Assembly (NCBI GenBank): GCA_002104945.1
Contig: MCFH01000065.1
Coordinates: 186,001 to 250,000, forward strand
Direction of reading: 5' to 3'
DNA from: Piromyces finnis finn
Lineage: Eukaryota; Fungi; Neocallimastigomycota
Length of the DNA: 64,000 bases
Shown: piece after piece, positions 25,528 through 60,679 of the stretch
How the letters are laid out: every line of letters begins with the position of its first letter
Numbering within the stretch: the first letter of the stretch is position 1
Made by a program: the position numbers and the translations under genes
Notes under the pieces: model-generated
Database searches by the model: none
What the model was told of the DNA's origin: nothing
What the model saw: only the letters and a program-made list of their open reading frames with translations

Positions 25528-25540
25528 GATTAAGAGTCTC
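25528..25540 (+). promoter_or_regulatory. Copia primer-binding site complementary to the tRNA-Lys(CUU) anticodon arm
   Basis: GATTAAGAGTCTC directly abuts the LTR CA. Its reverse complement GAGA-CTCTTAA-TC is the anticodon stem-loop of eukaryotic tRNA-Lys(CUU). Confidence 0.75.
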
Positions 25541-28500: not shown

Positions 28501-31500
28501 AATTCTTATTCTTACCCTAAAATTGATTCTATTTCTTCAATACATACATCAATTCCTATAACCTATCAAGATGCATTATCAAATGCTAATAGTGACAAAT
28601 GGATTAATGCTATTAATGATGAACTTAACAATCTTTATAGAAATAAAACTATGACATTCGTTAAAAATCTTCCCAAAGGTAAAAATGTTGTTACCACCAA
28701 ATGGATTTTCACTATTAAAACAGATGAAAATAATAACATTACTAAATATAAAGCACGTATTGTAGCTAGAGGTTACACACAAAAATATGGCATTGATTTT
28801 GAATTTACATACTCTTGTAACGAAATATTATAATAATAAACACACACACTCTAATGTATCAAATATATGTATTTTTTTTAATAATGTTTATTTATTAAAT
28901 TTATTATTATAATACGACTAACTCGCTAGGTCAGTGTATTATCAAACTAAAGACGAAACAAAAAAAACTAATTTTTATTAATTATTAATAAAAACACTAA
29001 AGAACTATTTTATCTTTCTTATTCTCTCTTTTATACATGAAAATTATTTTTTTTTTTTTTTTTTAATACAATTTGATAAGTGAATTAATTACTTAATGAT
29101 TGGTTATAAAAATATAATTATGAAATTTTCATTAATCTAACCTTAATGATTTTCTAGTCTAACCCTTATCATTAGATATACCTCATTACAACTCTCCAAC
29201 TTTAAATTTTGATATTATTAAACTTCTTCTTGCTATTTCAGCCAAATTTAAATGGAACGTTTACCAATTGGACATCAAATCTGCCTACCTCCATGCAAAT
29301 CTAGATACTGAAATTTATACAACTATTCCCGAAGGTGATAAAAACTATGGTAAAGGATTTTGGAAACTGAATAAAGCTCTATACGGACTCAAACAAAGCG
29401 GAAGACAATGGAATGAATACATTTCTACTTTTCTTATTAATCATGGATTTTCTCAATGCACTTCAGACTATTGTATTTTCTTTAAAACTTTTGATAACCA
29501 AATTTCTTGCATTATTGGACTTTATGTCGATGATATGATTATTTGTGGGACAAATCTTGAACTTATAAGTATAATCTCACAAATTAAATCTAAATTTAAA
29601 ATTTCTAACTGTCAACCTATCCATTATTTATTAGGTATTAAAATTGAAAACAATAATTTTTCTTATTCTATTTCACAAAAACATGTTATTGAAAATATTT
29701 TAGACCAATATAATTGTAAAAGTATAAAATTTAAAACAGATTTTATACTTAAAACAAAACAATTTTTATTAACACAAAAATAAAAAAATAAAACATTAAA
29801 TTTTTATTAAAAAAACATTTTTATTTGAACTCTTAAAAATATTATTAACTATATAATAGTTAATAATTAAAAAATTGAAAATAACAATTACATCGATTTA
29901 ACAAATAAAAATTACATGTATTTATATTTTTTCATAATTATATTCTAATATATTATTCTATTTAAATAAACATATATTTAATATAAAATAAACAAAACTA
30001 ATTTAATTAAATAATAAAATAACAGAACTAAACTAAACTAATTCATTATACTTTTAATTCAATTTGAGTAAACTCAAAATTGAATAAAGCCCATGTATTT
30101 TCTATAAATTAATTTAATATTATCAATACTATTCTTAATATATTTCCTATTGAAATATAAATAAATCTATTTTTAAAACTAAGTTAAAATTATTAAACTA
30201 TTCTAAATTTAAATAAAAAAGTATAATCTATTCTAAAATTAAATAAAAAGTATTTGAAAAATATTTTAATTATTTAAAATATTTGAAATATTTAAATTTA
30301 ATTAAAATTCTTTTATTCCTTAAACTTAAATATTTATCTTAATTTAAATTTAACGGAATTATTATAAAATAATTTATTATTAAATTATTCCATAAAATTT
30401 ACTCAAAAATTTTATAATCAGTTTTACTAAATATTAATTTATTATTTAATAATTAATAATTAATTATTAAATAATCTAAAGATATATATTATATCTTTAC
30501 AATCTCGCCCTTTAAGTCGAGCTCCTGCGAGATTATTTTCTTGAAGAAATTTAAATAACAAATGGTTACTACTTTTTCTAAATCATAACATTGTTAAAAA
30601 AATATATAAGTATTTAATTTATTTATACTCTTATTATCATTCTTGTTACTTATACATAATTCTAATAATTTATCTAAAACTTAATCATCAAGAATCCATT
30701 TGTTTTTATATTCAGATTATGGTTATTTATAAATTGTTTTCTATTAACATTTTTATTTAAGTATTCAAAACAAAACATTTACTTAAGTTTCAAATTTTTT
30801 TTTTTTATTCAATTCTTCTTGATCATCATGACTTTTATAATCTTCTTATGCATGATTAAAATTCTATTTTACAATTTTAATACTTTTTATTAATACTTAT
30901 AATAATCTGTTCAACTTTCTTTGATTTATTAGCTGAAGAAATTTCAATATTAAATTTTAAATTAAATCCATAGTTTGTATAAAATTGAAATTGATTGATT
31001 GATTACAATAAAATATTATAAGTAGATTCCAATATAACAATCAATTCGATTTTATTAACCAACGGAGATATTGGAACAATATCTCGTTCACCCTCTCATT
31101 TAAATGAAAAGTCTGTGATAAAATTTATATTAAATATATCAAACAGACAATTCTAAAATTATAAAGAAAATAGCATTTAAAGAGTATTAAATGTTTTTTA
31201 TTATTGTACAAGCTTTAAACCAAGTGGAACTTATTTTTTTTAAAGGTTATTATTAAGCAAATAAATATAACAAAATTCTTAGTAATAAAATATTTGTAAA
31301 AAAATTAACATTCATTAATAATAATGGAAAAACATCATTCAATAATTATATTAACTATACCACTATTTTTTTTTAATCTTATTATTAAATAAACAAAAGT
31401 GGTATCAAGTCATCAAGTAAATACTATAATTTAATTAACAAATTTATCATTTTTAGACGTTTTTAAAATACTTTTAGCATATTTATAATTCTCTTTTATT

Positions 31501-34500
31501 TTATAATTTATCAATATATGGTATTATAAAATTATTTCTTTTTTAAAAATTTAACAATGAATTCATAAATTTAAATATCATCAATAAAACATCACAGAAT
31601 TGATATAAACATATACATAATGTTGTACTAAATATTATTAATTATAAAGTAATTAAAATACTTCATCAAAAGCATCACTTAAAATATTAAAATAGAGCTG
31701 ATACATTTTTGAATAAAAGGTATGATAATAAATTAAAAATGCCATATAAAGATTAAAGCAATTTTAAATTCATCACTTTATTTAATTCTTACTAAGCTAT
31801 TGATATATTTAAATTTAGTTTAAAAACATATTTTACTCCATTTATCTTATTTATTGATTAAAGGAATATATGAATTTCAATAATTATATCATTTAATTTC
31901 CTACAATCAATATATAGTAATTATAGTTATCAATCTCATTATACTTCCATTAAAAAGAATTGTATAAAGATTAAAATCTTTTTTTTTTTTTCCTTTATAA
32001 AGTTCGTTTTATTAAGTACATAAAAACTATTCATTTATTAAAAACTCTTATAATTATTATACATATTACATTAATTTATATTTGTTTTATTCATTATATT
32101 TATTACATTTATCATATTTATTAACTTATTATATTTATTAATTTATTCTATTTATTACATTTTATTATATTTTTTTTCATTTGTTGTATTTATTAATTCT
32201 ATTTTTTTTTTTTTTTTTTTTTTTTAATTATTATTAATATTAACTATTATACTATCAAGTTGTTACTATTACTAAAACTATTCCTCATTAATTTCTATTA
32301 TAGCTATTTCTAATTCTACAATACTAATACATTACAATCATATTTATTTTTTAAATTACATTTATTATAATTAAAATTATTTAGATAACATTATTTTCCA
32401 TAGGACGAATGTACTTAACATTTTGTTATAATCCTCCACAATTCAGTAATTCATTAAGTTTCTTTTTAAAACATTGGAATTTTCAAATTTATTATTTCAT
32501 TACTGAATTGTTCTTCTTTCTTGTTTCTTTTTATTTTCATTTTATTCTTTATAAAATCCAGATAAATGAAATTAAGAACAGATCCAGAATAGATTAATTT
32601 TCTAGCTCTGATTTCACTACCATCATATTATTAAGAATAAAAAATATTACACTCATTTCTTATTATATATTTATTTAACTTTATAATTATTCAATCAAAA
32701 CTACTATATTAATTTATTCAAGTTATTTGAATCTTTTAAATATAAAACTTACTTCTTAATAAAAATATAAACTTATTAACTAGATATACAATAACTTCTT
32801 TATAAAAAATTCTTTATTTAATTAATTTATTTTAATTTATTAAATATAAAAAACATAATTTATTTAACAACTAAATTTGTAAAACCTCCTCATATTGAAT
32901 TCAAATTATTTTAATTATTTATTCTTAATCATTTGTTTAATAAATTATTTAATAAACTATTACAATCAAATTATCTTAATTTACTAAATATAAAAATAAT
33001 TTTTTTTTTTTAATAAATGTATAACTTTTTAAATAACTAAATTTGTATTGACTTTTGTTGATAAATTCAAATCAAATTAAAAATGCTTTAAATTTATATT
33101 CTAATTATTAAGAATTTTCTATTTAGTCAAATATTCAGTTATATAAAATACACCTTTATATAAAAGAAGTCGACCTGACTCCATCATATCAACTGGTGTT
33201 AGCGAATTCTTTATAAAGTATAAAGTAAGTTATTACAATGAAATTAAATTTTTAAGTTCGTTTTCGTATTACTTCAAAATATTTTAATATATTATATAAT
33301 ATATTTCTTAATTGTATTTATCTAATTTAATTAATAATATATTATCCTTGAATATATTATATTTATTTAGTTAGTTAATCGAATTTATATTGTATCTTCA
33401 TATTAAAGAAGTCGACCTGACTCTATCCTTTAAAGAAAAGGTGTCATCGAATTTTTTATTTAGTATAAAATTAAATTATTTTAAAAGTAATTTTAAATAT
33501 CAAATCATTTTCTAACTTCATTAAATTAAATTATATATTTCAAATTTTCAAGTTAAATTAATTTATAGTATTTTCAATTTAATTTATTATATACTATTTC
33601 CCAAAAAGATGTCGATCTGACTCTGTCCTCTAAAAAGGTGTCATCGAAATCTTATTATAATAAAGAATAATTTATTTATTTAACTAACTTTACACATTTA
33701 TTACTTTTACTTTTATTGTAAAATTTTAATTCATTTCTTAATTTTAATTTATTATATACTATATCTAAAAGATGTCGCTCAGACTCTATCCTATCAAAAG
33801 GTGTCGAGCGAGGTCTTTTAAGTATATAATAAATTCATTTCAAATTTACTTATTATATAATCAAATTTTAATTTGTTTTAATTATATATTCAATTTAATT
33901 TATTATATACAATATCTAAAGATGTCGCTCAGACTCTATCCTATCAAAAGGTGTCGAGCGAGGTCTTTTATAGTATATAATAAATTTATTTCAATAAGAT
34001 AACTTATTCCTCAACTACTTTTAATTAATAAATATCAAAATTTTAATTTTCATATTTCTCAATGTATTTTAAATAAATCTAAAATTATTATATACTACGT
34101 CTAAAAGATGTCGCTCAGACTCTATCCTATCAAAAGGTGTCGAGCGAGGTCTTTTATAATATATAATAAATATATTTCAATAAAATAACTTTTTCCAATA
34201 AGTGATATTTACATTTTAATTCACTTATTTCTCAATTTCATTTTAATTAATAAATATCAAAATTTTAATTTTCATACAATATATTTTAAATAATTCTATA
34301 ATTATTATATACCATGTTTAAAAGATGTCGCTCAGACTCTATCCTATCAAACGGTGTCGAGCGAGGTCTTTTAAGTATATAATAAGTTCATTTCAAAATA
34401 ACAATTAATAATTCATTCAAATAAGTGAAATCAACATACTAATTCACTTATTTCTCAATATATTTAAATAATTTTAAAATTTTATTAACTTTTTCTTAAT

Positions 34501-36753
34501 TTTCTTTCTTTTTAAATAAGTTTTAATTTTCTTACTTTGCAATTAATTTTTTGATTTAATTTACTCTTTTAATTGTATATATCCAATTTAATTTATAATA
34601 TACTATGTATAAAAGATGTCGCTCAGACTCTATCCTATCAAACGGTGTCGAGCGAGTTCTTTTTATAGTATATTATAATTAAATTTAATTTTAAAAGAGT
34701 TTCATCAATTTAAAAACAAGAGTATTTCATAAATATATTTCTATTAGTATTACAGATAGATTTTATATATAAAGATTTTATTGTTTCACAAAGTAGAGTT
34801 ACACTCATTCCAATTCTAATATATAAAAGAAAGTTTCACAAAGTAAAGATGTTCCACAAGCAAAGTTCCACGAGATTCGTTCAAAAGAATTCCACGAAGG
34901 GAGGATTTCACAAGGTAGTGTTCCACAAGTAAAAATTCCACAATTATAGTTCCACAAAGTAGGGTTTCACAAGGTAGTATTCACAAAATTTATTTAGAAT
35001 TTCACAAAGTAGGGTAACACAAAATTGATGTTACACTGACAGAAGTTACACCATAAATAGTTCCACAAGGTAGGCTTCTCAAGTAGACAAAAAAATTTCC
35101 GAAGAGAAAAAATTTCCGAAAAGTTCCAAATTTTCTACGGTAGCAATTCCCAATGTTGTAACTTCAGAAAATAAAAATTGTTTTATTATTAAATATAAAA
35201 CGTGTTTTTTAATAAGAAAAGGTAATTGTTATTGTAAAAGTATAAAATTTAAAACAGATTTTATACTTAAAACAAAACAATTTTTATTAACACAAAAATA
35301 AAAAAATAAAACATTAAATTTTTATTAAAAAAACATTTTTATTTGAACTCTTAAAAATATTATTAACTATATAATAGTTAATAATTAAAAAATTGAAAAT
35401 AACAATTACATCGATTTAACAAATAAAAATTACATGTATTTATATTTTTTCATAATTATATTCTAATATATTATTCTATTTAAATAAACATATATTTAAT
35501 ATAAAATAAACAAAACTAATTTAATTAAATAATAAAATAACAGAACTAAACTAAACTAATTCATTATACTTTTAATTCAATTTGAGTAAACTCAAAATTG
35601 AATAAAGCCCATGTATTTTCTATAAATTAATTTAATATTATCAATACTATTCTTAATATATTTCCTATTGAAATATAAATAAATCTATTTTTAAAACTAA
35701 GTTAAAATTATTAAACTATTCTAAATTTAAATAAAAAAGTATAATCTATTCTAAAATTAAATAAAAAGTATTTGAAAAATATTTTAATTATTTAAAATAT
35801 TTGAAATATTTAAATTTAATTAAAATTCTTTTATTCCTTAAACTTAAATATTTATCTTAATTTAAATTTAACGGAATTATTATAAAATAATTTATTATTA
35901 AATTATTCCATAAAATTTACTCAAAAATTTTATAATCAGTTTTACTAAATATTAATTTATTATTTAATAATTAATAATTAATTATTAAATAATCTAAAGA
36001 TATATATTATATCTTTACAATAATCTTAATAACTGCAGATCTCGAAAAACACCATGTACTGGTGATAATGATTCTGAAAACACTAAACGATTTGATACGA
36101 CTATTTACAAAAGTTTAATTGGTTCTCTTATTTATATTGCTAGATGTACAAGACCAGATATTTCTTTTGCTGTTCACAAAGCTGCTCGAAAATCTGAACA
36201 ACCTACTATTTCCGACTACAACAAAGTTATAAATATTATCAAGTATCTTAAAACTACTATAGACTACAAAATTACTTATGATGGTAATGGAAAAATTATT
36301 GCATTCACTGATGCTGATTTTGGGGGAGATAAGACGGATGGAAAATCAACATCAGGATATATAATTCTTATGGAAAATAATCCAATATGTTGGTGCTCAA
36401 ATAAACAACAAACTGTTGCTACTTCTACTGCTGAAGCCGAATATATCAGTACTACAGAATGCACTAAGAAAATTTTATACTTTAGAAATATCTTAGAAGA
36501 ATTATTCAAATTCAACGAACCTATAACTATTTATACTGACAACTTAGCAAGTAAAAGAGCAATTGAAAATGGTGAATTAAATTCCAAACTTAAACACATA
36601 AATATAAAATTTCATTTCAATAGAGACAATATTAAAAATAACAAAATTAAATTAGAATATATCGACACAAACAATATGCTAGCAGACTTTTTAACAAAAA
36701 ATATTAATGGATCAAAAATGAAAAAGTTCACTGACACTATATTTAAAAAATAA
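25558..36753 (+). CDS. Copia gag-pol polyprotein in three pieces (25558-28815, 29196-29714, 36025-36753); 1501 aa once the insertions are removed
   Basis: Contains CCHC (CDICKKNNHNTENC), protease (YDTGAS), integrase (HSDIIGP, SDNGKEY, NGIAER), RT (KARIVARG, LYGLKQS, YVDD) and RNase H (FTDADF, AEAEY, LADFLTK). The pieces join in frame without stops. Confidence 0.95.
28816..29190. mobile_element. 375-bp solo LTR (family D) inserted in the copia RT
   Basis: TGTAAC...ATTACA termini flanked by TSD ACTCT (28811-28815 and 29191-29195). Confidence 0.9.
33163..34662 (-). repeat. Array of eight ~50-nt GC-rich hairpin units (80-90 nt with the lower stem) in LARD copy 1
   Basis: Units start near 33163, 33405, 33605, 33768, 33918, 34104, 34321 and 34612, separated by AT-rich linkers. 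Confidence 0.95.
34783..35130 (-). repeat. Cluster of about 13 TT(C/T)CAC(A/G)A motifs just downstream of the LARD PBS
   Basis: Repeated GTTCCACAAG / TTTCACAAAG words. The same cluster occurs at ~48250-48590 and ~52880-53170. Confidence 0.85.
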
Positions 36754-39700: not shown

Positions 39701-41818
39701 GTTTTATTCTTTATAAAATCAAGATAAATGAAATTAAGAACAGATCTAGAATAGATTAATTTTCTAGCTCTGATTTCACTACCATCATATTATTAAGAAT
39801 AAAAAATATTACACTCATTTCTTATTATATATTTATTTAACTTTATAATTATTCAATCAAAGCTACTATATTAATTTATTCAAGTTATTTGAATCTTTTA
39901 AATATAAAACTTACTTCTTAATAAAAATATAAACTTATTAACTAGATATACAATAACTTCTTTATAATAAATTCAAATCAAATTAAATTTGTGAATTTAT
40001 TCTACAATTATAAGAAATTCTTTATTTAATTAATTTATTTTAATTTATTAATTATAAAAAACATAATTTATTTAACAACTAAATTTGTAAAACCTCCTCA
40101 TATTGAATTCAAATTATTTTAATTATTAATCTTAATCATTTGTTTAATGAATTATTTAATAAACTATTACATTCAAATTATCTTAATTTACGAAATATAA
40201 AATTAATTTTTTTTTTTTTAATAAATGTATAACTTTTTAAATAACTAAATTTGTATTGACTTTTGTTGATAAATTCAAATCAAATTAAAAATGCTTTAAA
40301 TTTATATTCTAATTATTAAGAATTTTCTATTTAGTCAAATATTCAGTTATATAAAATACACCTTTATATAAAAGAAGTCAACTCCATCCTATCAACTGGT
40401 GTCAGCGAATTCTTTATAAAGTATAAAACATGTTATTACAATGAAATTAAATTATTTTTTTTTTAAGCTCGTTTTCGTATTACTTCATAATATTTTAATA
40501 TATTATTTAATAAACTTCTTAATTGTATTTATCTAATTTAATTAATAATATATAATCCTTGAATATATTTTATTTATTTAATTAGTTAATCGAATTTATA
40601 TTGTATCTTCATATTAAAGAAGTCGACCTGACTCTATCCTTTAAAGAAAAGGTGTCGTCGAGTTCTTTATTTAGTATGAAGTTAAATTATTTTAAAAGTG
40701 ATTTTAAATATCAAATCATTTTCTAACTTCATTAAATTAAATTATATATTTCAAATTTTCAAGTTAAATTAATTTATAGTATTTTCAATTTAATTTATTA
40801 TATACTATTTCCCAAAAAGATGTCGATCTGACTCTGTCCTCTAAAAAGGTGTCATCGAAATCTTATTATAATAAAGAATAATTTATTTATTTAACTAACT
40901 TTACACATTTATTACTTTTACTTTTATTGTAAAATTTTAATTCATTTCTTAATTTTAATTTATTATATACTATATCTAAAAGATGTCGCTCAGACTCTAT
41001 CCTATCAAAAGGTGTCGAGCGAGGTCTTTTAAGTATATAATAAATTCATTTCAAATTTACTTATTATATAATCAAATTTTAATTTGTTTTAATTATATAT
41101 TCAATTTAATTTATTATATACAATATCTAAAGATGTCGCTCAGACTCTATCCTATCAAAAGGTGTCGAGCGAGGTCTTTGTAATGCTGACACAGAAAGAA
41201 TAGATTAGGATATCTATTCTATTACAATAACACAAAATTTAAAATAAAATAAAAAATTGTTTTATTAAAAATATCTTTTATTATAATAGAAATTTTATTA
41301 ATAACAATTACATCGATAAAATGATGAAAAATATCTTCTATTTATATTTTTCCTAAATACATTTATATTATATTATAACTATTTATTTCTTATATATTAT
41401 TATTTAAAATCTACACTAAAATCTTAATTATTAATAAATATTTAAACTATAACTATTTTTAGTAAAATACAATTGGCAATTCAAATTAAGTACCATTTAA
41501 TTTGAATATGTGCCCATGTATTATTGATATATTAATCATTTATTATTTATCTATTTCTATAAAAAAACAATACTAAAACTAGGGATTTAAATTGAGAATA
41601 TTAATTTACTTGTTAAACATTAAAAATAAATTAATAATTTATTTTGTTTTAAACTTTAATTATTAATAAATAAATTATGTCTCATTTTCTTTTTCTGAAT
41701 ATAATTTGTGTAACTTAAACAATAATACTTGTGGCTTAAGTTACATTAAAGATATCAAACAGAGGCGTTTGATATCTTTACAATCTCTCTCTCTAAGTCG
41801 AGCTCCTGCGAGATTAAT

Positions 41819-44800
41819 TTATAAGGAATCTTTTCTCGAAGGAATTTCAATTACAAATGGTTGGTATCTGTGCTTGATTAGATTACCAACTTTATTCTTT
41901 CTAATTTTCATGGAGGAGTCGTTCGACTTATATTTTGACTTTTTAGAGTTTCTTTCAAACTCTTGTATTAATTGTTTATCTGGAATATGATCTTCAGAAA
42001 CCCAAGTGGATTTGTCAAATCCTTTCCATGATAACTTATAAAATGTTTCACCATTAACAGATTTCATCTTTTCAATTTTCTCTGGAATTTTTTCAATTAA
42101 ATCTGTGTTAAGGTGAATGTTCCTCTTCCTACGATTAGACCTGTCGTTAAACTTGTTTTCAAAGTATGGTTCTAACAATGAAACATGAAAGACTGGATGA
42201 CATCTCATTGTCTTTGGAAGTTTCAATTTGAAAGCGAGAGAACTAACTTTTTCAATTATCTCAAATGGGCCAAGCATTTGAGGTGCTAATTTTCTCTTTA
42301 GGTTAGTTCCAGGAGAATCTTTCAATAACCATACCTTCTTTCCCATTTCGAACTCCGGGGGAATCATTCTCTTCATATCGGCATATTTCTTATATGTTTC
42401 TTTTGCTTTTTCTAAGTTTTCTTTTAATAATTTAAAGTTTTCATTCATATCAATTACTCTTTGTTCAGCTCTACTAGGTCTATCATTAGCTGGAATTTCT
42501 AAGCTGAACTTTGGATGAAAACCATAATTAGCAAAGAATGGAGATTGATTTATAGATTGTTGTAAAGTATTATTATATGCAAATTCAGCAAATGGGATAA
42601 GATCAACCCAGTTATTCTGCTTTTTATTTATAAAACAACGGAAATATTGTTCTAATATGCCGTTCACCCTCTCCGTTTGACCATCTGTCTGCGGATGGTT
42701 GGCAGTTGATAATGAATGATTGATATTAAGAAGGTCACAAAGTCTTGACCAAAAGTCAGAAGTAAATTGCGAGCCTCTATCAGAAATGATGGAATCAGGA
42801 AGACCATGCAAACGGAAGACATTAGCAATAAAAGCATCAGCAGCAATCGAAGCAGTAGGAAGACAACGTAAAGGAATGGCGTGAGCAAATTTAGTAAATC
42901 TATCGACAACAACCATGAGAGTTGTCATATCTCTGGACTTAGGAAGATCAACAATAAAATCAATAGAAATATCAGACCAGGGCCTACTGGGAGTGTCCAA
43001 AGGGGATAACAATCCATAAGGCTTATGCCTGGGGACTTTGGATTTGCAACAAGTCACGCAAGATTTGATAAAAGATTTAACGTCTGAATGAAACCTTGGC
43101 CACCAAAAGTTTCTGGAAATCAGTTCAGTGGTTTTCTTAATACCGAAATGACCAGCAGCAACAGAATCATGATGAAGTTCCAAAACTCTTGTCCTAAGAG
43201 ATTTAGGAACATAAATAAGATTATTATATAACAAAAATCCTTCGTTATCAATAATAACTTTATCAATATTTTTAATAGGTGCATTACATGCAGAACCATT
43301 CATTTTAAATTGGACAATAGAATTATACAAATCGTCATTTTTAAGTTCTAATAAAATAGAATCGATTAACGGTTTGTTATCGCTATGATGAAACGAAATA
43401 GTAAGACAAGAAACATCAGAATTAATATTATTCTCTACATGGTCACTTCTACGAGACAGGATATCAGGCTTACCGGATTTCTTTCCAGCTCTATAAATGA
43501 GTTTAAAATCAAATCTGGATAAGAACAAATTCCATCTAATTTGTCTCTGAGATAACATTTCAGGTTTTCTAGGAAATGTTAAATTCTTGTGATCAGTATA
43601 AATTATGAACGGATGGCGTGCACCTTCTAAATAATGACGCCATTCTTCAAGAGCAACTACAATAGCTAAAAGTTCCTTGTCATATATAGGATAGTTTCTT
43701 TGACAACTCGTCAAACTTTTTGAAAGAAATGCAATAGGATGTAATTTGCCATCAAATTCTTGAGAGAGAATAGCACCGACAGCATAATTACTAGCATCAG
43801 TTTCTACAATAAATTGTTTATTACTATCCGCATGTTTTAGAATAGGAGCTGACGTGAACAGAGATTTTAATAAAATAAAAGCGTCCTGATCTTCTTTCAC
43901 CCAGTTAAAAGCAACGTTCTTTCTAGTGAGTTTGTGAAGAGGGTTTGCAATTTTAGCAAAGTCTTTAATAAAAATTCTGTAATAGTTGCATAAACCAATA
44001 AAAGACTGAACCTCTTTAACATTCTTGGGAACCGGCCAATCGAGAATTGCTTTAACTTTATTCTCATCCATTTGCAATCCATCCTTTGAAATGACATAAC
44101 CAAGAAAAGTGGTTTTCTCAACATCAAACTCACATTTTTCTAATTTAACATAAAGATTATTTTCAAGTAGTTTCTTAAGTACCTTTTTAACATGCTCATG
44201 ATGTTCTTCGATATTATTAGAATAAATAAGAATATCATCAATATATGAGATAACAAAATCGTCTAAATAGTCACTAAGGACATCGTTAATGAAGTGTTGA
44301 AAAGTTGCAGGTGCATTCTTTAATCCAAAAGGCATAACCAGATATTCAAAATGACCATACCTAGTACGAAAAGCCGTTTTGTATTCGTCACCTTCTTTAA
44401 TACGAACAAGATTATAAGCGGATTTAAGGTCTAATTTGGTAAAAATCTTAGCATTTTTCACCCTATCCAAAAGGTCACTTATTAAAGGTAAAGGATATGA
44501 ATTACGAATTGTAATATTATTCAACCTTCTATAATCAATACAAAGTCTTAAGGAACCGTCCTTCTTTTTAACAAACAAAATTGGGGCACCAGCAGGAGAC
44601 GATGATTTCCTAATAAAACCTTTATTTAAATTTTCATCTATATACTTTTTAAGTTCCTCTCTTTCAACTTCAGTTAATGGATACAAGGGTCCATAAAATA
44701 AAGTTGAATCATCCTTAAGTTTGATTTCACAATCATAAGGTCTATGAGGAGGTAACACTTCACAATTTTTTTCGTTAAACACTTCACTAAATTCTAAATA

Positions 44801-46408
44801 TTGGGTTGGTACGGCGACCAATTTATCTTTATTAATATTCTTTTCATTATTATTATTACTACATGATTCATTATCATTATTACATGTTTCATTAATTTTC
44901 GTTACAATACATTTAACTTTTTTATTAAAACTAATATATTCATCATCGCTGTCATCTTCATCATTAATGGTTCTAACAAGGCGGCCTTTAACATATTCTT
45001 TTTCTTCATGGTTTGGGACGGAGGGATCTACTTTCGGTTTTTTGGTTAAGCTTCGGTCGAGAACATCATGATCTAATTGATCATTCTTGGACTTCTTTCT
45101 TGGTTTTCTTTTTCTTTTACCTTTGTTACAGTGTCTGGCACAATAACCAGAACTAAAAGCGATTTTCTTAGAGTCATAGAAAGCATTTGGATTATGCTTC
45201 TTTATCCACGGCAAACCAAGAATAACATCAACACCGGGGACTTGTAATCCATAAAGTTGAATTACTTCGAAGTGATTTTTGCAACGGAGCATGCACTTCT
45301 CAGTCCTTTCCCAAACACTAACAACTCCATCACTAACACCTGAAACACGGAATGGTTCTACCTTTTCCAACTTAATACCAAGGTCTTCAGCAAGACTTGG
45401 ATTAATGAAATTTAATTCAGAACCGGAATCAATTAAAACCTTAATCTTAACTTCCGAAACTTCATTGGTACTCAAGTAAAAGTCCACAAGGTTTAAATCA
45501 CTTTTCACTCCCTTGACTCCAACTTTGTAAATTTTTGGATTAACAATTTTTGGAGTCCTTTCTTTCACAATTCTTAACACTTTTCTGGGCTTTACTCTAT
45601 TAGGACAATTAAATTTTAAATGTCCTGGTTGTTTACAAAGAAAACATAACCCCTTTTTCTTTTCTTCTTCAAAGTTGTCTATGTTTTCATTGTAATTTTT
45701 ACTTGATCCTTGGATATTCACATACCTTTTGCGTTTATTTTCTCTACTAATTCTAAATACATCCACATCCATAGGATCGTTAGCCCTTCTACCATTAAAA
45801 TAAAATTCACTTAGAGAATTCCTTTTCATCATATCTTCAACTAAAATAGTTGAAGAAATCAATTGTTCAATTGAAGTTGGGTTTGATTCAATGAAAGCCA
45901 ACTTCTCCCTAAGTGGTGGTAATAAACCTTTCAGAAACATGTAGATTTTTGCGCTGTCATTAAAGCTTGAATTTTGGCTAATACGTTGAAACTCGGTAAT
46001 GTAATCTAATACCTGACCAAGTTTCCTTTGGCGAAGATTATCTAATTTACCGTTAGCTACAACGGTATCGTATCTATAACTGCCAAAATTAGCCTTCAAC
46101 CTATCTACAAATTCATCATAATGGTTTAAAACCCCACTATTATTCTTCATCAACACTGAAGCCCATTCCAAAGGTTTACCAGAGAAGTATGATATAACGA
46201 AGTCGACCTTGACTCGATCTGTATTATACAGTGTCGGTCGAGTACGAAATACCAACTCAACTCTGGTTAAAAATCCATCCAATTCTCTTTGTTTACCAGA
46301 AAATATCGGTGGAGCATTAATAATGTTCCCCGAATTCCCAGAAACACCCACAGTCCTATCACCCATCTCTAAATTTAAATTTTCAAACTCACTAATTAAG
46401 TCCTCCAA
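41819..46408 (-). CDS. Single-ORF Gag-PR-RT-RH-IN-chromodomain polyprotein, 1529 aa
   Basis: Contains CFLCKQPGHLKFNC (CCHC), LIDSGS (protease), YIDD (RT), ETDAS (RNase H), HHDSVAAGH..CVTC and D,D(35)E (integrase), GPF, and a C-terminal YKLSWKGFDKSTWV chromodomain. Confidence 0.97.
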   Translation of the reverse strand: MEDLISEFENLNLEMGDRTVGVSGNSGNIINAPPIFSGKQRELDGFLTRVELVFRTRPTLYNTDRVKVDFVISYFSGKPLEWASVLMKNNSGVLNHYDEFVDRLKANFGSYRYDTVVANGKLDNLRQRKLGQVLDYITEFQRISQNSSFNDSAKIYMFLKGLLPPLREKLAFIESNPTSIEQLISSTILVEDMMKRNSLSEFYFNGRRANDPMDVDVFRISRENKRKRYVNIQGSSKNYNENIDNFEEEKKKGLCFLCKQPGHLKFNCPNRVKPRKVLRIVKERTPKIVNPKIYKVGVKGVKSDLNLVDFYLSTNEVSEVKIKVLIDSGSELNFINPSLAEDLGIKLEKVEPFRVSGVSDGVVSVWERTEKCMLRCKNHFEVIQLYGLQVPGVDVILGLPWIKKHNPNAFYDSKKIAFSSGYCARHCNKGKRKRKPRKKSKNDQLDHDVLDRSLTKKPKVDPSVPNHEEKEYVKGRLVRTINDEDDSDDEYISFNKKVKCIVTKINETCNNDNESCSNNNNEKNINKDKLVAVPTQYLEFSEVFNEKNCEVLPPHRPYDCEIKLKDDSTLFYGPLYPLTEVEREELKKYIDENLNKGFIRKSSSPAGAPILFVKKKDGSLRLCIDYRRLNNITIRNSYPLPLISDLLDRVKNAKIFTKLDLKSAYNLVRIKEGDEYKTAFRTRYGHFEYLVMPFGLKNAPATFQHFINDVLSDYLDDFVISYIDDILIYSNNIEEHHEHVKKVLKKLLENNLYVKLEKCEFDVEKTTFLGYVISKDGLQMDENKVKAILDWPVPKNVKEVQSFIGLCNYYRIFIKDFAKIANPLHKLTRKNVAFNWVKEDQDAFILLKSLFTSAPILKHADSNKQFIVETDASNYAVGAILSQEFDGKLHPIAFLSKSLTSCQRNYPIYDKELLAIVVALEEWRHYLEGARHPFIIYTDHKNLTFPRKPEMLSQRQIRWNLFLSRFDFKLIYRAGKKSGKPDILSRRSDHVENNINSDVSCLTISFHHSDNKPLIDSILLELKNDDLYNSIVQFKMNGSACNAPIKNIDKVIIDNEGFLLYNNLIYVPKSLRTRVLELHHDSVAAGHFGIKKTTELISRNFWWPRFHSDVKSFIKSCVTCCKSKVPRHKPYGLLSPLDTPSRPWSDISIDFIVDLPKSRDMTTLMVVVDRFTKFAHAIPLRCLPTASIAADAFIANVFRLHGLPDSIISDRGSQFTSDFWSRLCDLLNINHSLSTANHPQTDGQTERVNGILEQYFRCFINKKQNNWVDLIPFAEFAYNNTLQQSINQSPFFANYGFHPKFSLEIPANDRPSRAEQRVIDMNENFKLLKENLEKAKETYKKYADMKRMIPPEFEMGKKVWLLKDSPGTNLKRKLAPQMLGPFEIIEKVSSLAFKLKLPKTMRCHPVFHVSLLEPYFENKFNDRSNRRKRNIHLNTDLIEKIPEKIEKMKSVNGETFYKLSWKGFDKSTWVSEDHIPDKQLIQEFERNSKKSKYKSNDSSMKIRKNKVGNLIKHRYQPFVIEIPSRKDSL

Positions 46409-46464
46409 CGTTAAATATAAAACAAAATATAAAAAATGTTTTCTTACTACTGTTTCAAGTAAGT

Positions 46465-46519
<55 letters not shown>

Positions 46520-46635
46520 AAACTATTTCTACAAAAACGATGTTAGTTAATACAAAAGTTATTCAAACTCGATCTGTTATACAGTGTCGAACAAGTTTTG
46601 TATTATATAATAATAATATTAATCAGAGTAGTTTT

Positions 46636-46672
<37 letters not shown>

Positions 46673-46682
46673 CTTCTGCTAG

Positions 46683-46778
46683 GGTAGCAACAAAGTTTCT
46701 TCAATACTCTCTTGAACCAAGGTAGCAACAAAGTTTCTTCAATAATCTCTTGAACCAAGGTAGCAACAAAGTTTCTTC
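46683..46778. repeat. 2.5 tandem copies of a 38-bp unit in the chromovirus 1 5' UTR
   Basis: GGTAGCAACAAAGTTTCTTCAATACTCTCTTGAACCAA is repeated. Confidence 0.85.
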
Positions 46779-46815
46779 GGGCGGTAGATATCCTAACGTA
46801 CTCTTGAAGTAGTTA

Positions 46816-46827
46816 GGTAATTGTTAT
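46816..46827 (-). promoter_or_regulatory. Self-priming-type PBS ATAACAATTACC
   Basis: It directly follows the 5' LTR. It is complementary to GTAATTGTTAT inside the same LTR (46950-46960), which lies ~30 nt downstream of a TATAAA (46990-46995). Confidence 0.8.
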
Positions 46828-49739
46828 TGTAATGCTGACACAGAAAGAATAGATTAGGATATCTATTCTATTACAATAACACAAAATTTAAAATAAAATA
46901 AAAAATTGTTTTATTAAAAATATCTTTTATTATAATAGAAATTTTATTAATAACAATTACATCGATAAAATGATGAAAAATATCTTCTATTTATATTTTT
47001 CCTAAATACATTTATATTATATTATAACTATTTATTTCTTATATATTATTATTTAAAATCTACACTAAAATCTTAATTATTAATAAATATTTAAACTATA
47101 ACTATTTTTAGTAAAATACAATTGGCAATTCAAATTAAGTACCATTTAATTTGAATATGTGCCCATGTATTATTGATATATTAATCATTTATTATTTATC
47201 TATTTCTATAAAAAAACAATACTAAAACTAGGGATTTAAATTGAGAATATTAATTTACTTGTTAAACATTAAAAATAAATTAATAATTTATTTTGTTTTA
47301 AACTTTAATTATTAATAAATAAATTATGTCTCATTTTCTTTTTCTGAATATAATTTGTGTAACTTAAACAATAATACTTGTGGCTTAAGTTACATTAAAG
47401 ATATCAAACAGAGGCGTTTGATATCTTTACAGTCTTTTATAGTATATAATAAATTTATTTCAATAAGATAACTTATTCCTCAACTACTTTTAATTAATAA
47501 ATATCAAAATTTTAATTTTCATATTTCTCAATGTATTTTAAATAAATCTAAAATTATTATATACTACGTCTAAAAGATGTCGCTCAGACTCTATCCTATC
47601 AAAAGGTGTCGAGCGAGGTCTTTTATAATATATAATAAATATATTTCAATAAAATAACTTTTTCCAATAAGTGATATTTACATTTTAATTCACTTATTTC
47701 TCAATTTCATTTTAATTAATAAATATCAAAATTTTAATTTTCATACAATATATTTTAAATAATTCTATAATTATTATATACCATGTTTAAAAGATGTCGC
47801 TCAGACTCTATCCTATCAAACGGTGTCGAGCGAGGTCTTTTAAGTATATAATAAGTTCATTTCAAAATAACAATTAATAATTCATTCAAATAAGTGAAAT
47901 CAACATACTAATTCACTTATTTCTCAATATATTTAAATAATTTTAAAATTTTATTAACTTTTTCTTAATTTTCTTTCTTTTTAAATAAGTTTTAATTTTC
48001 TTACTTTGCAATTAATTTTTTGATTTAATTTACTCTTTTAATTGTATATATCCAATTTAATTTATAATATACTATGTATAAAAGATGTCGCTCAGACTCT
48101 ATCCTATCAAACGGTGTCGAGCGAGTTCTTTTTATAGTATATTATAATTAAATTTAATTTTAAAAGAGTTTCATCAATTTAAAAACAAGAGTATTTCATA
48201 AATATATTTCTATTAGTATTACAGATAGATTTTATATATAAAGATTTCATTGTTCCATACAGTAGAATTACACTTATTCCAATTCCAATATAAAAAGGAA
48301 AGTTTCACAGAGTAGAAGTTCCACAAGCAAAGTTCCACGAGATTCGTTCAAAAGAATTCCACGAAGGAAGGATTTCACAAGGTAGTGTTCCACAAGTAGG
48401 TAAAAATTCCACAATTATAGTTCCACAAAGTAGTGTTTCACAAAATTTATTTAGAATTTCACAAAGTAGGGTAACACAAAATTAATGTTACACTGACAGA
48501 AGTTACACCATAAATAGTTCCACAAGGTAGGCTACTCAAGTAGACAAAAAAAAAATTTCCGAAGAGAAAAAATTTCCGAAAAGTTCCAAATTTTCTACGG
48601 TAGCAATTCCCAATGTTGTAACTTCAGAAAATAAAAATTGTTTTATTATTAAATATAAAACGTGTTTTTTAATAAGAAAAGGTAATTGTTATTGTAAAAG
48701 TATAAAATTTAAAACAGATTTTATACTTAAAACAAAACAATTTTTATTAACACAAAAATAAAAAAATAAAACATTAAATTTTTATTTTAAAAAAAAACAT
48801 TTTTATTTAAACTCTTAAAAATATTATTAACTATATAATAGTTAATAATTAAAAAATTGAAAATAACAATTACCTCGATTTAACAAATAAAAATTACATG
48901 TATTTATATTTTTTCATAATTATATTCTAATATATTATTCTATTTAAATAAACATATATTTAATATAAAATAAACAAAACTAATTTAATTAAATAATAAA
49001 ATAACAGAACTAAACTAAACTAATTCATTATACTTTTAATTCAATTTGAGTAAACTCAAAATTGAATAAAGCCCATGTATTTTCTATAAATTAATTTAAT
49101 ATTATCAATACTATTCTTAATATATTTCCTATTGAAATATAAATAAATCTATTTTTAAAACTAAGTTAAAATTATTAAACTATTCTAAATTTAAATAAAA
49201 AAGTATAATCTATTCTAAAATCAAATAAAAAGTATTTAAAAAATATTTTAATTATTTTAAATATTTGAAATATTTAAATTTAATTAAAATTCTTTTATTC
49301 CTTAAACTTAAATATTTATCTTAATTTAAATTTAACGGAATTATTATAAAATAATTTATTATTAAATTATTCCATAAAATTTACTCAAAAATTTTATAAT
49401 CAGTTTTACTAAATATTAATTTATTATTTAATAATTAATAATTAATTATTAAATAATCTAAAGATATATCTTATATCTTTACACAAAACAATACTAAAAC
49501 TAGGGGTTTGAATTGAGAATTTTAATTTATTTGTTAAACATTAAGAATAAACTAATAATTTATTTTGTTTTAAACTTTAATTATTAATAAATAAATTATG
49601 TCCCATTTTCTTTTTCTGAATATAATTCGTGTAACTTAAACAATGATATTTATGGCTTAAGTTACATTAAAGATATCAATCTGTGGCGTTTGATATCTTT
49701 ACAATCTCTCTCTCTAAGTCGAGCTCCTGCGAGATTAAT

Positions 49740-58700: not shown

Positions 58701-60480
58701 TTTCATCTATATACTTTTTAAGTTCCTCTCTTTCAACTTCAGTTAATGGATACAAGGGTCCATAAAATAAAGTTGAATCATCCTTAAGTTTGATTTCACA
58801 ATCATAAGGTCTATGAGGAGGTAACACTTCACAATTTTTTTCGTTAAACACTTCACTAAATTCTAAATATTGGGTTGGTACGGCGATCAATTTATCTTTA
58901 TTAATATCCTTTTCATTATTATTATTATTACTACATGATTCATTATCATTATTACATGTTTCAATAATTTTCGTTACAATACATTTAACTTTTTTATTAA
59001 AACTAATATATTCATCATCGCTGTCATCTTCATCATTAATGGTTCTAACAAGGCGGCCTTTAACATATTCTTTTTCTTCATGGTTTGGGACGGAGGGATC
59101 TACTTTCGGTTTTTTGGTTAAGCTTCGGTCGAGAACATCATGATCTAATTGATCATTCTTGGACTTCTTTCTTGGTTTTCTTTTTCTTTTACCTTTGTTA
59201 CAGTGTCTGGCACAATAACCAGAACTAAAAGCGATTTTCTTAGAGTCATAGAAAGCATTTGGATTATGCTTCTTTATCCACGGCAAACCAAGAATAACAT
59301 CAACACCGGGGACTTGTAATCCATAAAGTTGAATTACTTCGAAGTGATTTTTGCATCGGAGCATACACTTCTCAGTCCTTTCCCATACACTAACAACTCC
59401 ATCACTAACACCTGATACACGGAATGGTTCTACCTTTTCCAACTTAATACCAAGGTCTTCAGCAAGACTTGGATTAATGAAATTCAATTCAGAACCGGAA
59501 TCAATTAAAACCTTAATTTTAACTTCCGAAACTTCATTGGTACTCAAGTAAAAATCCACAAGATTTAAATCACTTTTCACTCCCTTGACTCCAACTTTGT
59601 AAATTTTTGGATTAACAATTTTTGGAGTCCTTTCTTTAACAATTCTTAACACTTTTCTGGGCTTTACTCTATTAGGACAATTAAATTTTAAATGTCCTGG
59701 CTGTTTACAAAGAAAACATAATCCTTTTTTCTTTTCTTCTTCAAAGTTGTCCATGTTTTCATTGTAATTTTTACTTGATCCTTGGATATTCACATACCTT
59801 CTACGCTTGTTTTCTCTACTAATTCTAAATACATCCACATCCATAGGATCATCAGCCCTTCTACTATTAAAATAAAATTCACTAAGCGAATTCCTTTTCA
59901 TCATATCTTCAACTAAAATAGTTGAAGAAATCAATTGTTCAATTGAAGTTGGGTTTGATTCAATGAAAGCCAACTTCTCCCTAAGTGGTGGTAATAAACC
60001 TTTCAGAAACATGTAGATTTTTGCGCTATCATTAAAGCTTGAATTTTGGCTAATACGTTGAAACTCGGTAATGTAATCTAATACCTGACCAAGTTTCCTT
60101 TGGCGAATATTATCTAATTTACCGTTAGCTACAACGGTATCGTATCTATAACTGCCAAAGTTAGCCTTCAACCTATCTACAAATTCATCATAATGGTTTA
60201 AAACCTCACTATTATTCTTCATCAACACTGAATCCCATTCCAACGGTTTACCAGAGAAGTATGATATAACAAAGTCGACCTTGACTCGATCTGTATTATA
60301 CAGTGTCGGTCGAGTACGAAATACCAACTCAACTCTGGTTAAAAATCCATCCAATTCTCTTAGTTTACCAGAAAATGTCGGTGGAGCATTAATAATGTTC
60401 CCCGAGTTCCCAGAAACACCTACAGTCCCATCACCCATCTCCAAATTCAAACTTTTAAACTCACTAATTAAGTCCTCCAA
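49740..60480 (-). CDS. Chromovirus copy 2 polyprotein in two pieces (58077-60480 and 49740-51928); 1530 aa once LARD 3 is removed
   Basis: Both pieces are nearly identical to the copy-1 protein and join in frame across TSD GAACC. Confidence 0.93.
51934..58076 (+). mobile_element. LARD copy 3 (6143 bp), opposite orientation to the other two
   Basis: LTRs at 51934-52724 and 57284-58076, TSD GAACC, PBS at 52725-52736, PPT AAAGGGCGAGA before 57284, and a deletion of roughly 0.2 kb near 55450 relative to the other copies. Confidence 0.95.
53284..54790 (+). repeat. Eight-unit hairpin array of LARD copy 3
   Basis: AAAGACCTCGCTCGACACCTTTTGATAGGATAGAGTCTGAGCGACATCTTT and variants at about 53286, 53577, 53794, 53980, 54130, 54295, 54495 and 54745. 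Confidence 0.93.
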
Positions 60481-60679
60481 TTCAAAATATAATATACAAT
60501 ATAAAATTAAAATGGTTTCTTACTACTGTTTCAAGTAAGTAATCTTAAAAAAAAATTTTTTTTTTTTTTTAATTACACTAGTACAATATATTCTAATACA
60601 AAAGTTATTCAAACGCGTTCTGCAAAGCAGTGTCGAACAAGTTTTGTATTACTAATTCCTTTAAGATTTTAATAGTTTT

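What the first reader, a model, noticed from the sequence alone, without database searches (positions are those of the whole stretch)
33163..34662. A non-coding LTR parasite carries eight copies of a structured RNA motif that its autonomous helper has only twice: a candidate amplified packaging signal
SEEN (element-sense strand): the main LARD unit is CGCUC-GAC-A-CC[UUUUGAUA]GG-AUAGA-GUC-U-GAGCG and a divergent unit is UCGA-U-GAC-A-CC[UUUUCUUUAAA]GG-AUAGA-GUC-A-GG-UCGA. The same architecture occurs in the chromovirus 5' UTRs: copy 1 (46562-46591) UUC-GAC-A-CUGU[AUA]ACAG-AUCGA-GUU-U-GAA, and copy 2 (60608-60637) UUC-GAC-A-CUGC[UUU]GCAG-AACGC-GUU-U-GAA, a compensatory U-A to C-G change. It occurs again inside early gag (46203-46241; 60273-60311): UCGA-CC-GAC-A-CUGUA[UAA]UACAG-AUCGA-GUC-AA-GG-UCGA. 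All share a GAC/GUY stem, a 1x5 internal loop (A opposite ANNGM), a variable apical stem-loop and a 3' bulge. LARD and UTR copies also have an AU-rich basal stem of 9-14 bp, which covaries in LARD unit 8. Linkers have diverged much more than the cores. KNOWN: packaging and dimerisation signals of LTR retrotransposons such as Ty1 and Ty3 map to the 5' UTR and start of gag, and non-autonomous elements depend on helper Gag. INFERENCE: the LARD multiplied a helper cis-signal about four-fold, which could let it out-compete helper RNA for Gag. I know of no description of this motif.
Basis: partly seen in the sequence, partly recalled or inferred. Interest (0 to 1): 0.92.

Follow-up and report, generated by a model that had tools for sequence, protein, structure and literature searches.

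The report
Amplified leader RNA hairpin in parasite retrotransposon
A non-coding retrotransposon in this AT-rich, flagellated fungus-like genome carries eight copies of a covariation-supported RNA hairpin that related protein-coding retrotransposons carry once or twice just upstream of gag, which makes it a natural test of whether a parasite gains by multiplying a helper's RNA recognition signal.

Summary
Each of three 6.3-kb non-coding LTR elements (LARDs) in the window has eight spaced copies of a ~37-nt hairpin core, seven good and one degenerate. Each core sits in a ~90-nt rod. Cores are 98% identical among units 1-5, while linkers are no more alike than shuffled sequence. The same architecture lies on the sense strand in the 5' leader of every chromovirus lineage tested. 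That covers four lineages in this genome (gag identity down to 46%) and 60-65% relatives on metagenome contigs. Covariation is strong: 92% of cells paired, 7 of 11 pairs changed on both sides, 0 of 500 shuffles as high. Rfam and the papers searched have nothing like it.

The interpretation needs one correction. The chromovirus in the window (family A) is a distant cousin, and a LARD-only model does not detect its copies. The LARD is a collinear, decayed derivative of family D. Family D has five copies, none in the window; one was checked and is intact, with identical LTRs. Its leader carries this hairpin once, so the amplification is eight-fold. A second leader motif is also multiplied, 15 copies against 4.

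A role in Gag binding or packaging fits the position, the retention and the exposed purine loop. It remains inference, at about 45%.

The parts
29715..36019 (-). LARD copy 1: complete non-autonomous LTR element, 6305 bp, TSD ATAAT
   Evidence: The LTRs 29713-30503 and 35231-36021 are 100% identical. Termini are TG..CA with a 5-bp TSD. The longest ORF is 77 aa. The element is collinear with family D.
35233..36019 (-). 5' LTR of LARD1; contains the 11-nt self-primer complement GTAATTGTTAT at 35399-35409
35222..35232 (-). PBS (ATAACAATTAC on the sense strand), exact complement of the 11-mer inside the LTR (Tf1-type self-priming signature)
34782..35066 (-). Leader block with 15 sense-strand copies of GTG[GAT]AA[CT] at ~15-nt spacing (family D leader has 4)
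33170..34655 (-). Hairpin array of LARD1: eight cores (34619-34655, 34328-34364, 34111-34147, 33925-33961, 33775-33811, 33612-33648, 33412-33451, 33170-33206), each inside a ~90-nt rod
32539..32616 (-). Relic of the protease coding region
   Evidence: tblastn gives 65% over 26 aa to the D polyprotein, E 1e-5. blastn to D is 76.5%.
31755..31917 (-). Stretch ~70% identical at DNA level to family D's ORF (L067:3913-4088, about aa 690-748, where I place RT by comparison with family A's Pfam positions; D itself was not scanned)
30807..31117 (-). Relic of the integrase region
   Evidence: 40% over 60 aa to A polyprotein aa 1266-1325, E 4.5e-9. blastn to D is 72%.
29715..30501 (-). 3' LTR of LARD1, preceded on the sense strand by a PPT flank shared with chromovirus A
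40380..41172 (-). LARD copy 2, units 8-4 (40380-40403, 40623-40662, 40823-40859, 40986-41022, 41136-41172). The array is split by the insertion of chromovirus A copy 1.
47580..48124 (-). LARD copy 2, units 3-1 (47580-47616, 47797-47833, 48088-48124)
53293..54779 (+). LARD copy 3 (51934-58076, TSD GAACC, inserted in chromovirus A copy 2): eight units
41179..47433 (-). Chromovirus family A copy 1 (gag-PR-RT-RH-IN; chromodomain seen in copy 2), LTRs 99.8% identical, TSD GTCTT
46559..46594 (-). Family A leader hairpin, ~195 nt upstream of the gag ATG
46203..46241 (-). Family A hairpin inside gag (codes RTRPTLYNTDRVKVDF), ~125 nt after the ATG
60605..60640 (-). Family A copy 2 leader hairpin (apical CUGC/GCAG)
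60275..60313 (-). Family A copy 2 hairpin inside gag

Best explanation
The ~37-nt core and its ~90-nt rod form a conserved cis-acting RNA element of the genomic (sense) transcript of one clade of Ty3/chromovirus retrotransposons.

Architecture: an AU-rich basal stem; a 5-6 bp outer stem of free sequence; a 1-2 nt 3' bulge; a 3-4 bp middle stem (usually GAC/GUC); an asymmetric internal loop with one A opposite A-N-N-G-M (usually AUAGA); and an apical stem-loop that begins C-G.

The LARD is a decayed, collinear derivative of the low-copy family D element. It lost all coding capacity and kept LTRs, self-priming PBS, PPT and leader. It multiplied the leader rod from one to eight copies, and a second leader motif from 4 to 15.

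Most likely mechanism (inferred, not shown): the rod presents unpaired purines of the internal loop as a binding site for the zinc-knuckle nucleocapsid part of Gag supplied in trans by family D, or by the related family C, which has the same apical half. In that reading the rod is a packaging or recruitment signal, and eight sites raise avidity for limiting Gag, so the parasite RNA is encapsidated preferentially.
For: Shown here:
1. The structure is real. With autonomous elements only (22 distinct sequences from 4 genomic lineages plus 7 metagenome relatives), 92.4% of cells pair and 7 of 11 pairs change on both sides. There are 41 double-changed cells against 15.6 +/- 3.9 in shuffles (0 of 500 reach it), and the slid controls score <= 0.088 against 0.494. 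The middle stem flips from GAC/GUC to GUC/GAC, AUC/GAU, AAC/GUU and GCAC/GUGC.
2. Position and strand are constant. The element is on the sense strand, about 40-250 nt upstream of the gag ATG and about 230-330 nt after the LTR, in all lineages.
3. In the core helices of the autonomous leader copies I count seven G.U pairs and no A.C juxtaposition, by reading the pair tables. This favours the sense RNA.
4. The motif is specific to these elements. A degenerate core pattern gives 292 genome hits against 4 for the reversed control, and about 97 of the 100 places listed lie in these elements.
5. The LARD descends from family D. LTR, PBS and leader are 85-92% identical, the units are 77-85% identical to D's single rod, and there are PR, RT and IN relics.
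6. Family D looks active: 100% identical 754-bp LTRs and a 1599-aa ORF.
7. Family D has 5 copies against about 25-28 LARD arrays.
8. Cores are held at 98% identity while linkers are randomised, in a genome of ~20% GC.
9. Both A and D Gag carry one CCHC knuckle.

From the literature: retroviral Gag/NC selects genomes through unpaired purines. For HIV-1 this is the asymmetric G//AGG internal loop of leader stem-loop SL1 (PMC13736810). Repeated short structured motifs are a common form of packaging signal in ssRNA viruses (PMC8206606).
Against: - No binding, packaging or expression data exist. The four public runs that hold the LARD are not known to be RNA.
- Differences between LARD copies are not depleted in cores: 21 in 786 core nt against 59 in 2262 linker nt. 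The sample is small and the differences are concentrated in units 7-8.
- Unit 8 is decaying in the youngest copy.
- Whole-rod folding energy barely separates the strands: -21.6 against -20.7 kcal/mol on average.
- Copy number across families does not track hairpin number. Family A has 2 hairpins and more than 70 copies; family C has 1 hairpin and about 38 copies.
- The GTGRAAY block in the leader is also amplified and could be the real Gag-binding site.
Confidence: 0.45

Rival explanations
1. The rod is a cis-acting RNA element with a different job, needed by every transposition-competent RNA. Candidates are nuclear export, stabilisation, or localisation of the unspliced transcript through a host protein, in the manner of a CTE-like element. 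More copies would then simply give more of that activity.
For: The facts are the same as for the best explanation: conserved structure, sense strand, leader position and retention in a non-coding derivative. Rod-shaped elements with conserved asymmetric internal loops that work better in multiple copies are known for retroviral constitutive transport elements (my own knowledge, not checked here).
Against: The position between PBS and gag, with a second copy early in gag in families A and B, is the classical place of packaging signals rather than export elements. No host genes carry the motif.
Confidence: 0.2
2. The rods are dimer-linkage elements. Each rod is an imperfect palindrome, so its arms can pair in trans with the arms of another rod. 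Eight rods would then promote LARD:LARD or LARD:helper heterodimers and co-packaging.
For: In the minimum-energy fold of the whole array, units 3 and 5, and units 6 and 7, pair with each other instead of folding locally. LARD rods are ~80% identical to the D rod.
Against: No apical loop is self-complementary, and loop sequences vary freely (UUUUGAUA, AUA, UAA, ACA, AUUA and others), so there is no kissing-loop initiation site. The conserved part is the internal loop, not the arms.
Confidence: 0.1
3. One rod is functional, but the amplification is neutral. Tandem duplication by template switching or unequal recombination is common in leaders, and copy number brings no advantage.
For: - Family A leaders also carry lineage-specific 38-bp and 52-bp tandem repeats.
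- Unit number varies from 5 to 8 among LARD copies.
- Unit 8 is degenerate.
- Cores show no depletion of differences between copies.
Against: Cores of units 1-5 stay 98% identical while their linkers are no more alike than shuffled sequence and differ in length, 57-198 nt. That pattern is hard to get without selection or conversion acting on each core. Most of the arrays whose spacing I could read keep all units.
Confidence: 0.15
4. The element acts as DNA: a palindromic binding site for a transcription factor or chromatin protein downstream of the LTR promoter.
For: The motif is an inverted repeat, it sits in the transcribed leader close to the promoter, and it is multiplied like enhancer repeats.
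Against: The stems change sequence while keeping complementarity, including G.U pairs that are mismatches in duplex or antisense form. A sequence-specific duplex site would conserve the half-site sequence instead.
Confidence: 0.05

Closest known systems
Retroviral packaging signals built on exposed purines in leader stem-loops (e.g. the G//AGG internal loop of HIV-1 SL1; purine loops of MMTV and MPMV)
   Same: Both are leader stem-loops between PBS and gag, extending into early gag in some lineages, with an asymmetric purine-containing internal loop. The partner Gag has a CCHC knuckle (PMC13736810).
   Different: No sequence relation exists. The loop here is 1x5 (A//AUAGA). Function is untested. 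The host is a fungal Ty3/chromovirus with Tf1-like self-priming, not a retrovirus.
LARDs and other non-autonomous LTR elements (barley LARDs, TRIMs, Cassandra)
   Same: These elements have LTRs, PBS and PPT but no coding capacity, are presumed to be mobilised in trans, and have an internal domain reported to specify conserved RNA secondary structure (PMC7215508, citing Kalendar 2004).
   Different: Here the conserved structure is a defined, covarying motif. It can be traced to a single copy in the autonomous parent's leader and is then multiplied eight-fold. I found no such case in the papers searched.
Repetitive structural motifs as packaging signals of ssRNA viruses (coronavirus AA-bulge repeats, alphavirus stem-loop series)
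   Same: Both show several short, similar stem-loops in a row, thought to recruit capsid protein cooperatively (PMC8206606).
   Different: In those viruses the repeats belong to the autonomous genome. Here the autonomous element has one or two copies and the parasite has the array.
Tf1/sushi-type self-priming Ty3 elements
   Same: An 11-nt stretch inside every LTR is the exact complement of the PBS, and the PBS has no tRNA-like TGG.
   Different: The self-primer lies ~130-180 nt upstream of the PBS. The hairpin studied here is 230-330 nt downstream of the LTR and is not part of that structure.

Membership tests
LARD (non-autonomous LTR retrotransposon) | Two LTRs with TG..CA termini and a target-site duplication | tested here: met
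   787-bp LTRs, 100% identical. TSDs are ATAAT (copy 1) and GAACC (copy 3).
LARD (non-autonomous LTR retrotransposon) | No gag/pol coding capacity, long internal domain | tested here: met
   The longest ORF is 77 aa. Only short PR and IN relics remain at protein level, plus one collinear stretch 70% identical at DNA level to D's ORF.
LARD (non-autonomous LTR retrotransposon) | PBS and PPT shared with an autonomous partner | tested here: met
   PBS ATAACAATTACC and the PPT flank are shared with family A. LTR, PBS and leader are 85-92% identical to family D.
LARD (non-autonomous LTR retrotransposon) | Mobilised in trans by the partner's proteins | not testable with these tools
   Indirect evidence only: identical LTRs, about 25-28 arrays, and insertion into and by chromoviruses.
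Ty3/chromovirus (the autonomous relatives) | gag-PR-RT-RNaseH-IN order with a C-terminal chromodomain | tested here: met
   Pfam hits in that order. Chromo PF00385 is on the 49740-51821 ORF.
Retroelement packaging signal (Psi) | Lies in the leader and/or 5' gag of the genomic RNA, on the sense strand | tested here: met
Retroelement packaging signal (Psi) | Conserved secondary structure supported by covariation | tested here: met
Retroelement packaging signal (Psi) | Bound specifically by Gag/NC and required for encapsidation | not testable with these tools
   No binding or VLP data. The complex predictor offered takes proteins only.
Kissing-loop dimerisation initiation site | Self-complementary (palindromic) apical loop | tested here: not met
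   The loops are UUUUGAUA, GUUUGAUA, AUA, UAA, UUU, ACA, AUUA and others. None is palindromic and none is conserved.
Any curated RNA family (Rfam 15) | Match to a covariance model | tested here: not met
   No match at E <= 1 over 29700-47500, both strands.
Tf1-type self-priming | A stretch near the transcript 5' end complementary to the PBS | tested here: met
   GTAATTGTTAT is in every LTR and its complement lies directly after each 5' LTR. There are 16 window hits against 0.26 expected. The transcription start was not mapped.

The most novel reading that the evidence does not exclude
A retrotransposon parasite has evolved a 'super-signal'. It copied its parent's single Gag-recognition hairpin eight times, and a second leader motif about four times, so that its non-coding RNA out-competes the parent's genome for capsid protein. 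This would explain why the parent persists at 5 copies and the parasite at about 25-28. It would be the LTR-retrotransposon counterpart of defective-interfering genomes, with a defined, covarying RNA motif that could be dosed experimentally.
Probability: 0.35. Interest if true: 0.8.

Novelty: new variant of a known kind. Interest (0 to 1): 0.64.

Why it matters
Packaging signals of LTR retrotransposons outside yeast are almost unknown. How non-autonomous elements win access to helper proteins is an open question.

This finding offers a compact RNA motif backed by covariation and conserved across species of what look like anaerobic gut fungi. It has a clear parent with one copy, cousins with two copies and a derivative with eight. 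That series turns 'does signal dosage drive parasitism?' into a direct binding and packaging experiment.

The motif also gives a search model for annotating this chromovirus clade and its non-coding derivatives in very AT-rich genomes, where protein-based annotation misses them.

Tried and rejected
- **RNAalifold on a plain MAFFT alignment of the eight units** returned a different small hairpin. The outer stems are out of register between units 1-5 and 6-8, so I specified the structure by hand and realigned with covariance models.
- **LARD-only model R2** did not report the window's family A copies at E <= 10 with default filters. The LARD-to-A link is therefore transitive, through families D, C and B and the metagenome relatives, not direct.
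- **Whole-genome search with R1** is capped at 150 scored hits, all of them LARD or D units, so it cannot show off-target hits. I used a degenerate pattern with a reversed control instead.
- **Two exact-pattern scans of metagenome contigs** gave nothing, then two chance matches without stems in 37-45% GC contigs.
- **Sequencing runs.** Four runs hold the LARD, but their type (RNA or DNA) is a guess and they are served as contigs. No transcript start, strand or level could be read. A(15) after 35333 in one contig lies on a genomic A-run and is not interpretable.
- **Differences between LARD copies** show no depletion in cores. The sample is too small and is dominated by units 7-8.
Unit-number variation was read from hit spacing instead.
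- **K-turn reading of the 1x5 loop,** considered by eye only. The 3' strand has NNN-GA, but the 5' strand lacks the G.A partner and family A has AACGC, so I do not claim it.
- **Two metagenome relatives** (P0013, P0016) had no DNA available.
Full report
**Context**

The window is G000:C195:186001-250000 of a 56.5-Mb, 232-contig genome of about 20% GC. It encodes a cilium BBSome subunit. My guess is an anaerobic gut fungus (Neocallimastigomycota); I did not verify this.

Positions 24.6-61.5 kb are a nest of LTR elements:

| Element | Window coordinates | Sense strand | Features |
|---|---|---|---|
| LARD1 | 29715-36019 | minus | 787-bp LTRs 100% identical, TSD ATAAT |
| LARD2 | 37127-41179 + 47432-49483 | minus | split by chromovirus A copy 1 |
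| Chromovirus A copy 1 | 41179-47433 | minus | TSD GTCTT, LTRs 99.8% identical |
| LARD3 | 51934-58076 | plus | TSD GAACC, inserted in chromovirus A copy 2 |
| Chromovirus A copy 2 | 49431-51934 + 58074-61467 | minus | split by LARD3 |

The LARDs and chromovirus A have inserted into each other, so both were recently active. The A polyprotein has gag, PR, RT, RNase H, IN and a chromodomain.

**The observation**

- Each LARD has eight units, and the window holds 24.
- An exact pattern for units 1-7 gives 21 hits against 0 in shuffles.
- Units 1-5 fold into ~90-nt rods.
- Cores are 98% identical among units 1-5 and the 28-nt flanks that make the basal stem are 83-86% identical.
- Linkers are 57-198 nt long and 13% GC. 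They are 48% identical, the same as shuffled sequence at 49%.
- In a genome this AT-rich, islands of 50% GC held constant between randomised spacers point to constraint on the cores.

**Is it the same motif in autonomous elements?**

Model R1 was built from 8 LARD units plus the 4 family A copies. I fetched 5' regions for all gag lineages found in the genome. R1 found a hit on the sense strand in the leader of every lineage: A (95-100% gag identity), B (78-85%), C (50-54%) and D (46%). Families A and B have a second hit about 125-170 nt into gag.

Model R2 was built from LARD units only:

| Target | Score / E-value |
|---|---|
| Family D leader | 54.7 bits, E 9e-14 |
| Family C leaders | 37-40 bits, E ~1e-8 |
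| B2 and B3 leaders | E 0.006 and 0.06 |
| An A-type leader (L050) | E 0.3 |
| The window's A copies | not reported at E <= 10 |

No hit fell anywhere except at these leader hairpins. It holds through a chain of intermediates and through conserved position.

**Covariation**

In-context minimum-energy folds give the same architecture for all ten leader variants and for the gag copies. Indexed from the bulged A:
- Outer stem, read 5' arm/3' arm: UCGCUC/GAGCGA (LARD 1-5), UCGAU/AUCGA (unit 6), UCGUC/GACGA (C), UUGUUC/GAAUAA (A), UUGCUC/GAAGCAA (B2), UCGACC/GGUCGA (gag A).
- Middle stem: GAC/GUC, GAC/GUU (A) or AAC/GUU (C).
- Fourth apical pair in A-type leaders: U-A, U.G or C-G.

Polyproteins 60-65% identical occur on metagenome contigs of about 30% GC. 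The records are ENA and JGI metagenomes and NCBI assemblies; one hit is labelled as a MAG in the table. Seven contigs had DNA. All seven carry the hairpin on the sense strand. Where a called gene follows (L057, both sites; L058, both sites; L064; L065; L066) it lies 55-175 nt upstream of that gene. In L059 and L063 the hit lies downstream of the element's own gene and no following gene is called. Their middle stems read GUC/GAC, AUC/GAU and GCAC/GUGC, and their outer stems UCGUUC/GAACGA and UCGAUC/GAUCGA. The internal loop stays AUAGA, ACAGA or AGAGA.

On an alignment of autonomous copies only (A6, 22 distinct rows):
- 92.4% of cells pair, against 79.1% in shuffles.
- 7 of 11 pairs change on both sides.
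- 41 cells are double-changed, against 15.6 +/- 3.9 in shuffles. No shuffle in 500 reaches this or the covariation score (0.494 against 0.256).
- Slid controls score 0.088 or less.

In the core helices of the leader copies I count seven G.U pairs and no A.C juxtaposition, by reading the pair tables. This favours the sense RNA over the antisense strand or duplex DNA, although whole-rod energies do not separate the strands.

A degenerate core pattern has 292 genome hits against 4 for its reversed control. About 97 of the 100 places listed lie in these elements. Rfam has no match.

**Who is the parent?**

- BLAST of LARD1 against the fetched loci shows the 5' LTR, PBS and first 57 nt of leader are 85% identical to family D. 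The first 624 nt are 92% identical. The figure is 73% for C and 69% over ~300 bp for A.
- A full D copy (L067) has 754-bp LTRs that are 100% identical, one 1599-aa ORF and one hairpin.
- The LARD is collinear with D: LTR and leader, seven array positions that all map onto D's single rod at 77-85%, then PR, RT and IN relics, then PPT and 3' LTR.
- D has 5 copies. Two (C230, C46) have open frames of 1590-1599 aa; only the C230 copy was examined in full.
- The LARD has 175 exact unit matches in about 25-28 arrays.
- Hit spacing shows 5, 6 or 7 exact units per array, with 7 the most common.

The amplification is therefore one to eight relative to the parent.

The LARD leader also holds 15 sense-only copies of GTG[GAT]AA[CT], against 4 in D's leader. 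Leader cis-motifs in general have been multiplied.

**Mechanism**

- *Shown:* a conserved, covarying, sense-strand leader structure; its retention and multiplication in an element that kept only cis-acting parts; and a CCHC knuckle in A and D Gag.
- *Established elsewhere:* Gag/NC picks genomes through unpaired purines, including the asymmetric internal loop of HIV-1 SL1 (PMC13736810). Repeated structured motifs often serve as packaging signals (PMC8206606). LARDs are thought to depend on trans-complementation and to specify conserved RNA structure (PMC7215508).
- *Inferred:* the A//AUAGA loop is the Gag-binding site, and eight sites give an avidity advantage. Family C has the same apical half and could also serve as helper.

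Rivals I cannot exclude:
- another RNA-level role, such as export, stability or localisation;
- dimer linkage by arm exchange, since units pair with one another in the whole-array fold;
- a functional single rod with neutral amplification;
- a DNA-level site, which I consider unlikely given the covariation.

Translation control is unlikely, because the LARD encodes nothing.

**Weak points**

- There are no expression or binding data. The public runs that hold the LARD are of unknown type and are served as contigs.
- Differences between copies do not spare the cores.
- Unit 8 is decaying.
- Copy number across families does not follow hairpin number.
- Counts from the whole-genome searches are lower bounds.

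**Verdict**

I found no description of the motif. I rate it a new variant of a known kind, with interest about 0.64.

Noticed in passing
window 34782-35066 (minus strand); L032:2448-3064: The LARD leader has 15 sense-strand copies of GTG[GAT]AA[CT] (often CTTTGTGRAAC) at ~15-nt spacing and none on the antisense strand. The family D leader has 4 and the family A leader none. This is a second leader motif multiplied in the parasite, and it could be the real or a co-operating protein-binding site.
   Followed up: partly
window 35399-35409 / 35222-35232, 46950-46960 / 46817-46827 and every other LTR: Each LTR holds an 11-nt stretch (GTAATTGTTAT) that is the exact complement of the PBS directly after the 5' LTR, in LARDs and chromoviruses alike. 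There are 16 hits against 0.26 expected. The PBS has no tRNA-type TGG. This is the signature of Tf1-like self-priming.
   Followed up: partly
window 46683-46778, 60676-60815, 46467-46511, 46632-46667: Family A leaders carry lineage-specific tandem repeats just after the PBS (38 bp x 2.5 in copy 1, an unrelated 52 bp x 2.7 in copy 2). Copy 1 also has A-runs of 45 and 36 nt inside the leader.
   Followed up: no
window 46203-46241 and 60275-60313; L034:2149-2187: In families A and B a second hairpin lies inside gag, in a segment (RTRPTLYNTDRVKVDF) not conserved at protein level in family D. Differences between A and B there keep pairing through G.U (ACA to GCA, GTC to GTT). The surrounding coding sequence forms a long rod (z -5.4 for A).
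   Followed up: partly
window 41172-41183: Chromovirus A copy 1 inserted 7 nt beyond a LARD2 hairpin core, inside that unit's basal stem (TSD GTCTT).
   Followed up: no
L057:654-691 and 6673-6710; L058:357-394 and 6142-6179: Two metagenome contigs carry two consecutive polyprotein genes, each preceded by the hairpin. This suggests tandem or nested copies of the related chromovirus in other organisms.
   Followed up: no
window 25558-28833 and 24637-25530: A copia-type gag-IN-RT ORF breaks off within RT. Upstream lie fragments of a family A LTR, a LARD LTR and a third repeat (also at 36898-37130). This is an older layer of the same nest.
   Followed up: no
window 7574-10147: An 857-aa ORF has no Pfam hit at E <= 0.001. 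Another first-stage note (s1-176757) calls it a protein-primed B-family DNA polymerase. I did not examine it.
   Followed up: no
window 33100-34720 (minus strand): In the minimum-energy fold of the whole array, units 3 and 5, and units 6 and 7, pair with each other rather than locally (MFE -332, z -8.5 against shuffles; antisense -315). The array can therefore adopt long-range or intermolecular duplexes.
   Followed up: partly
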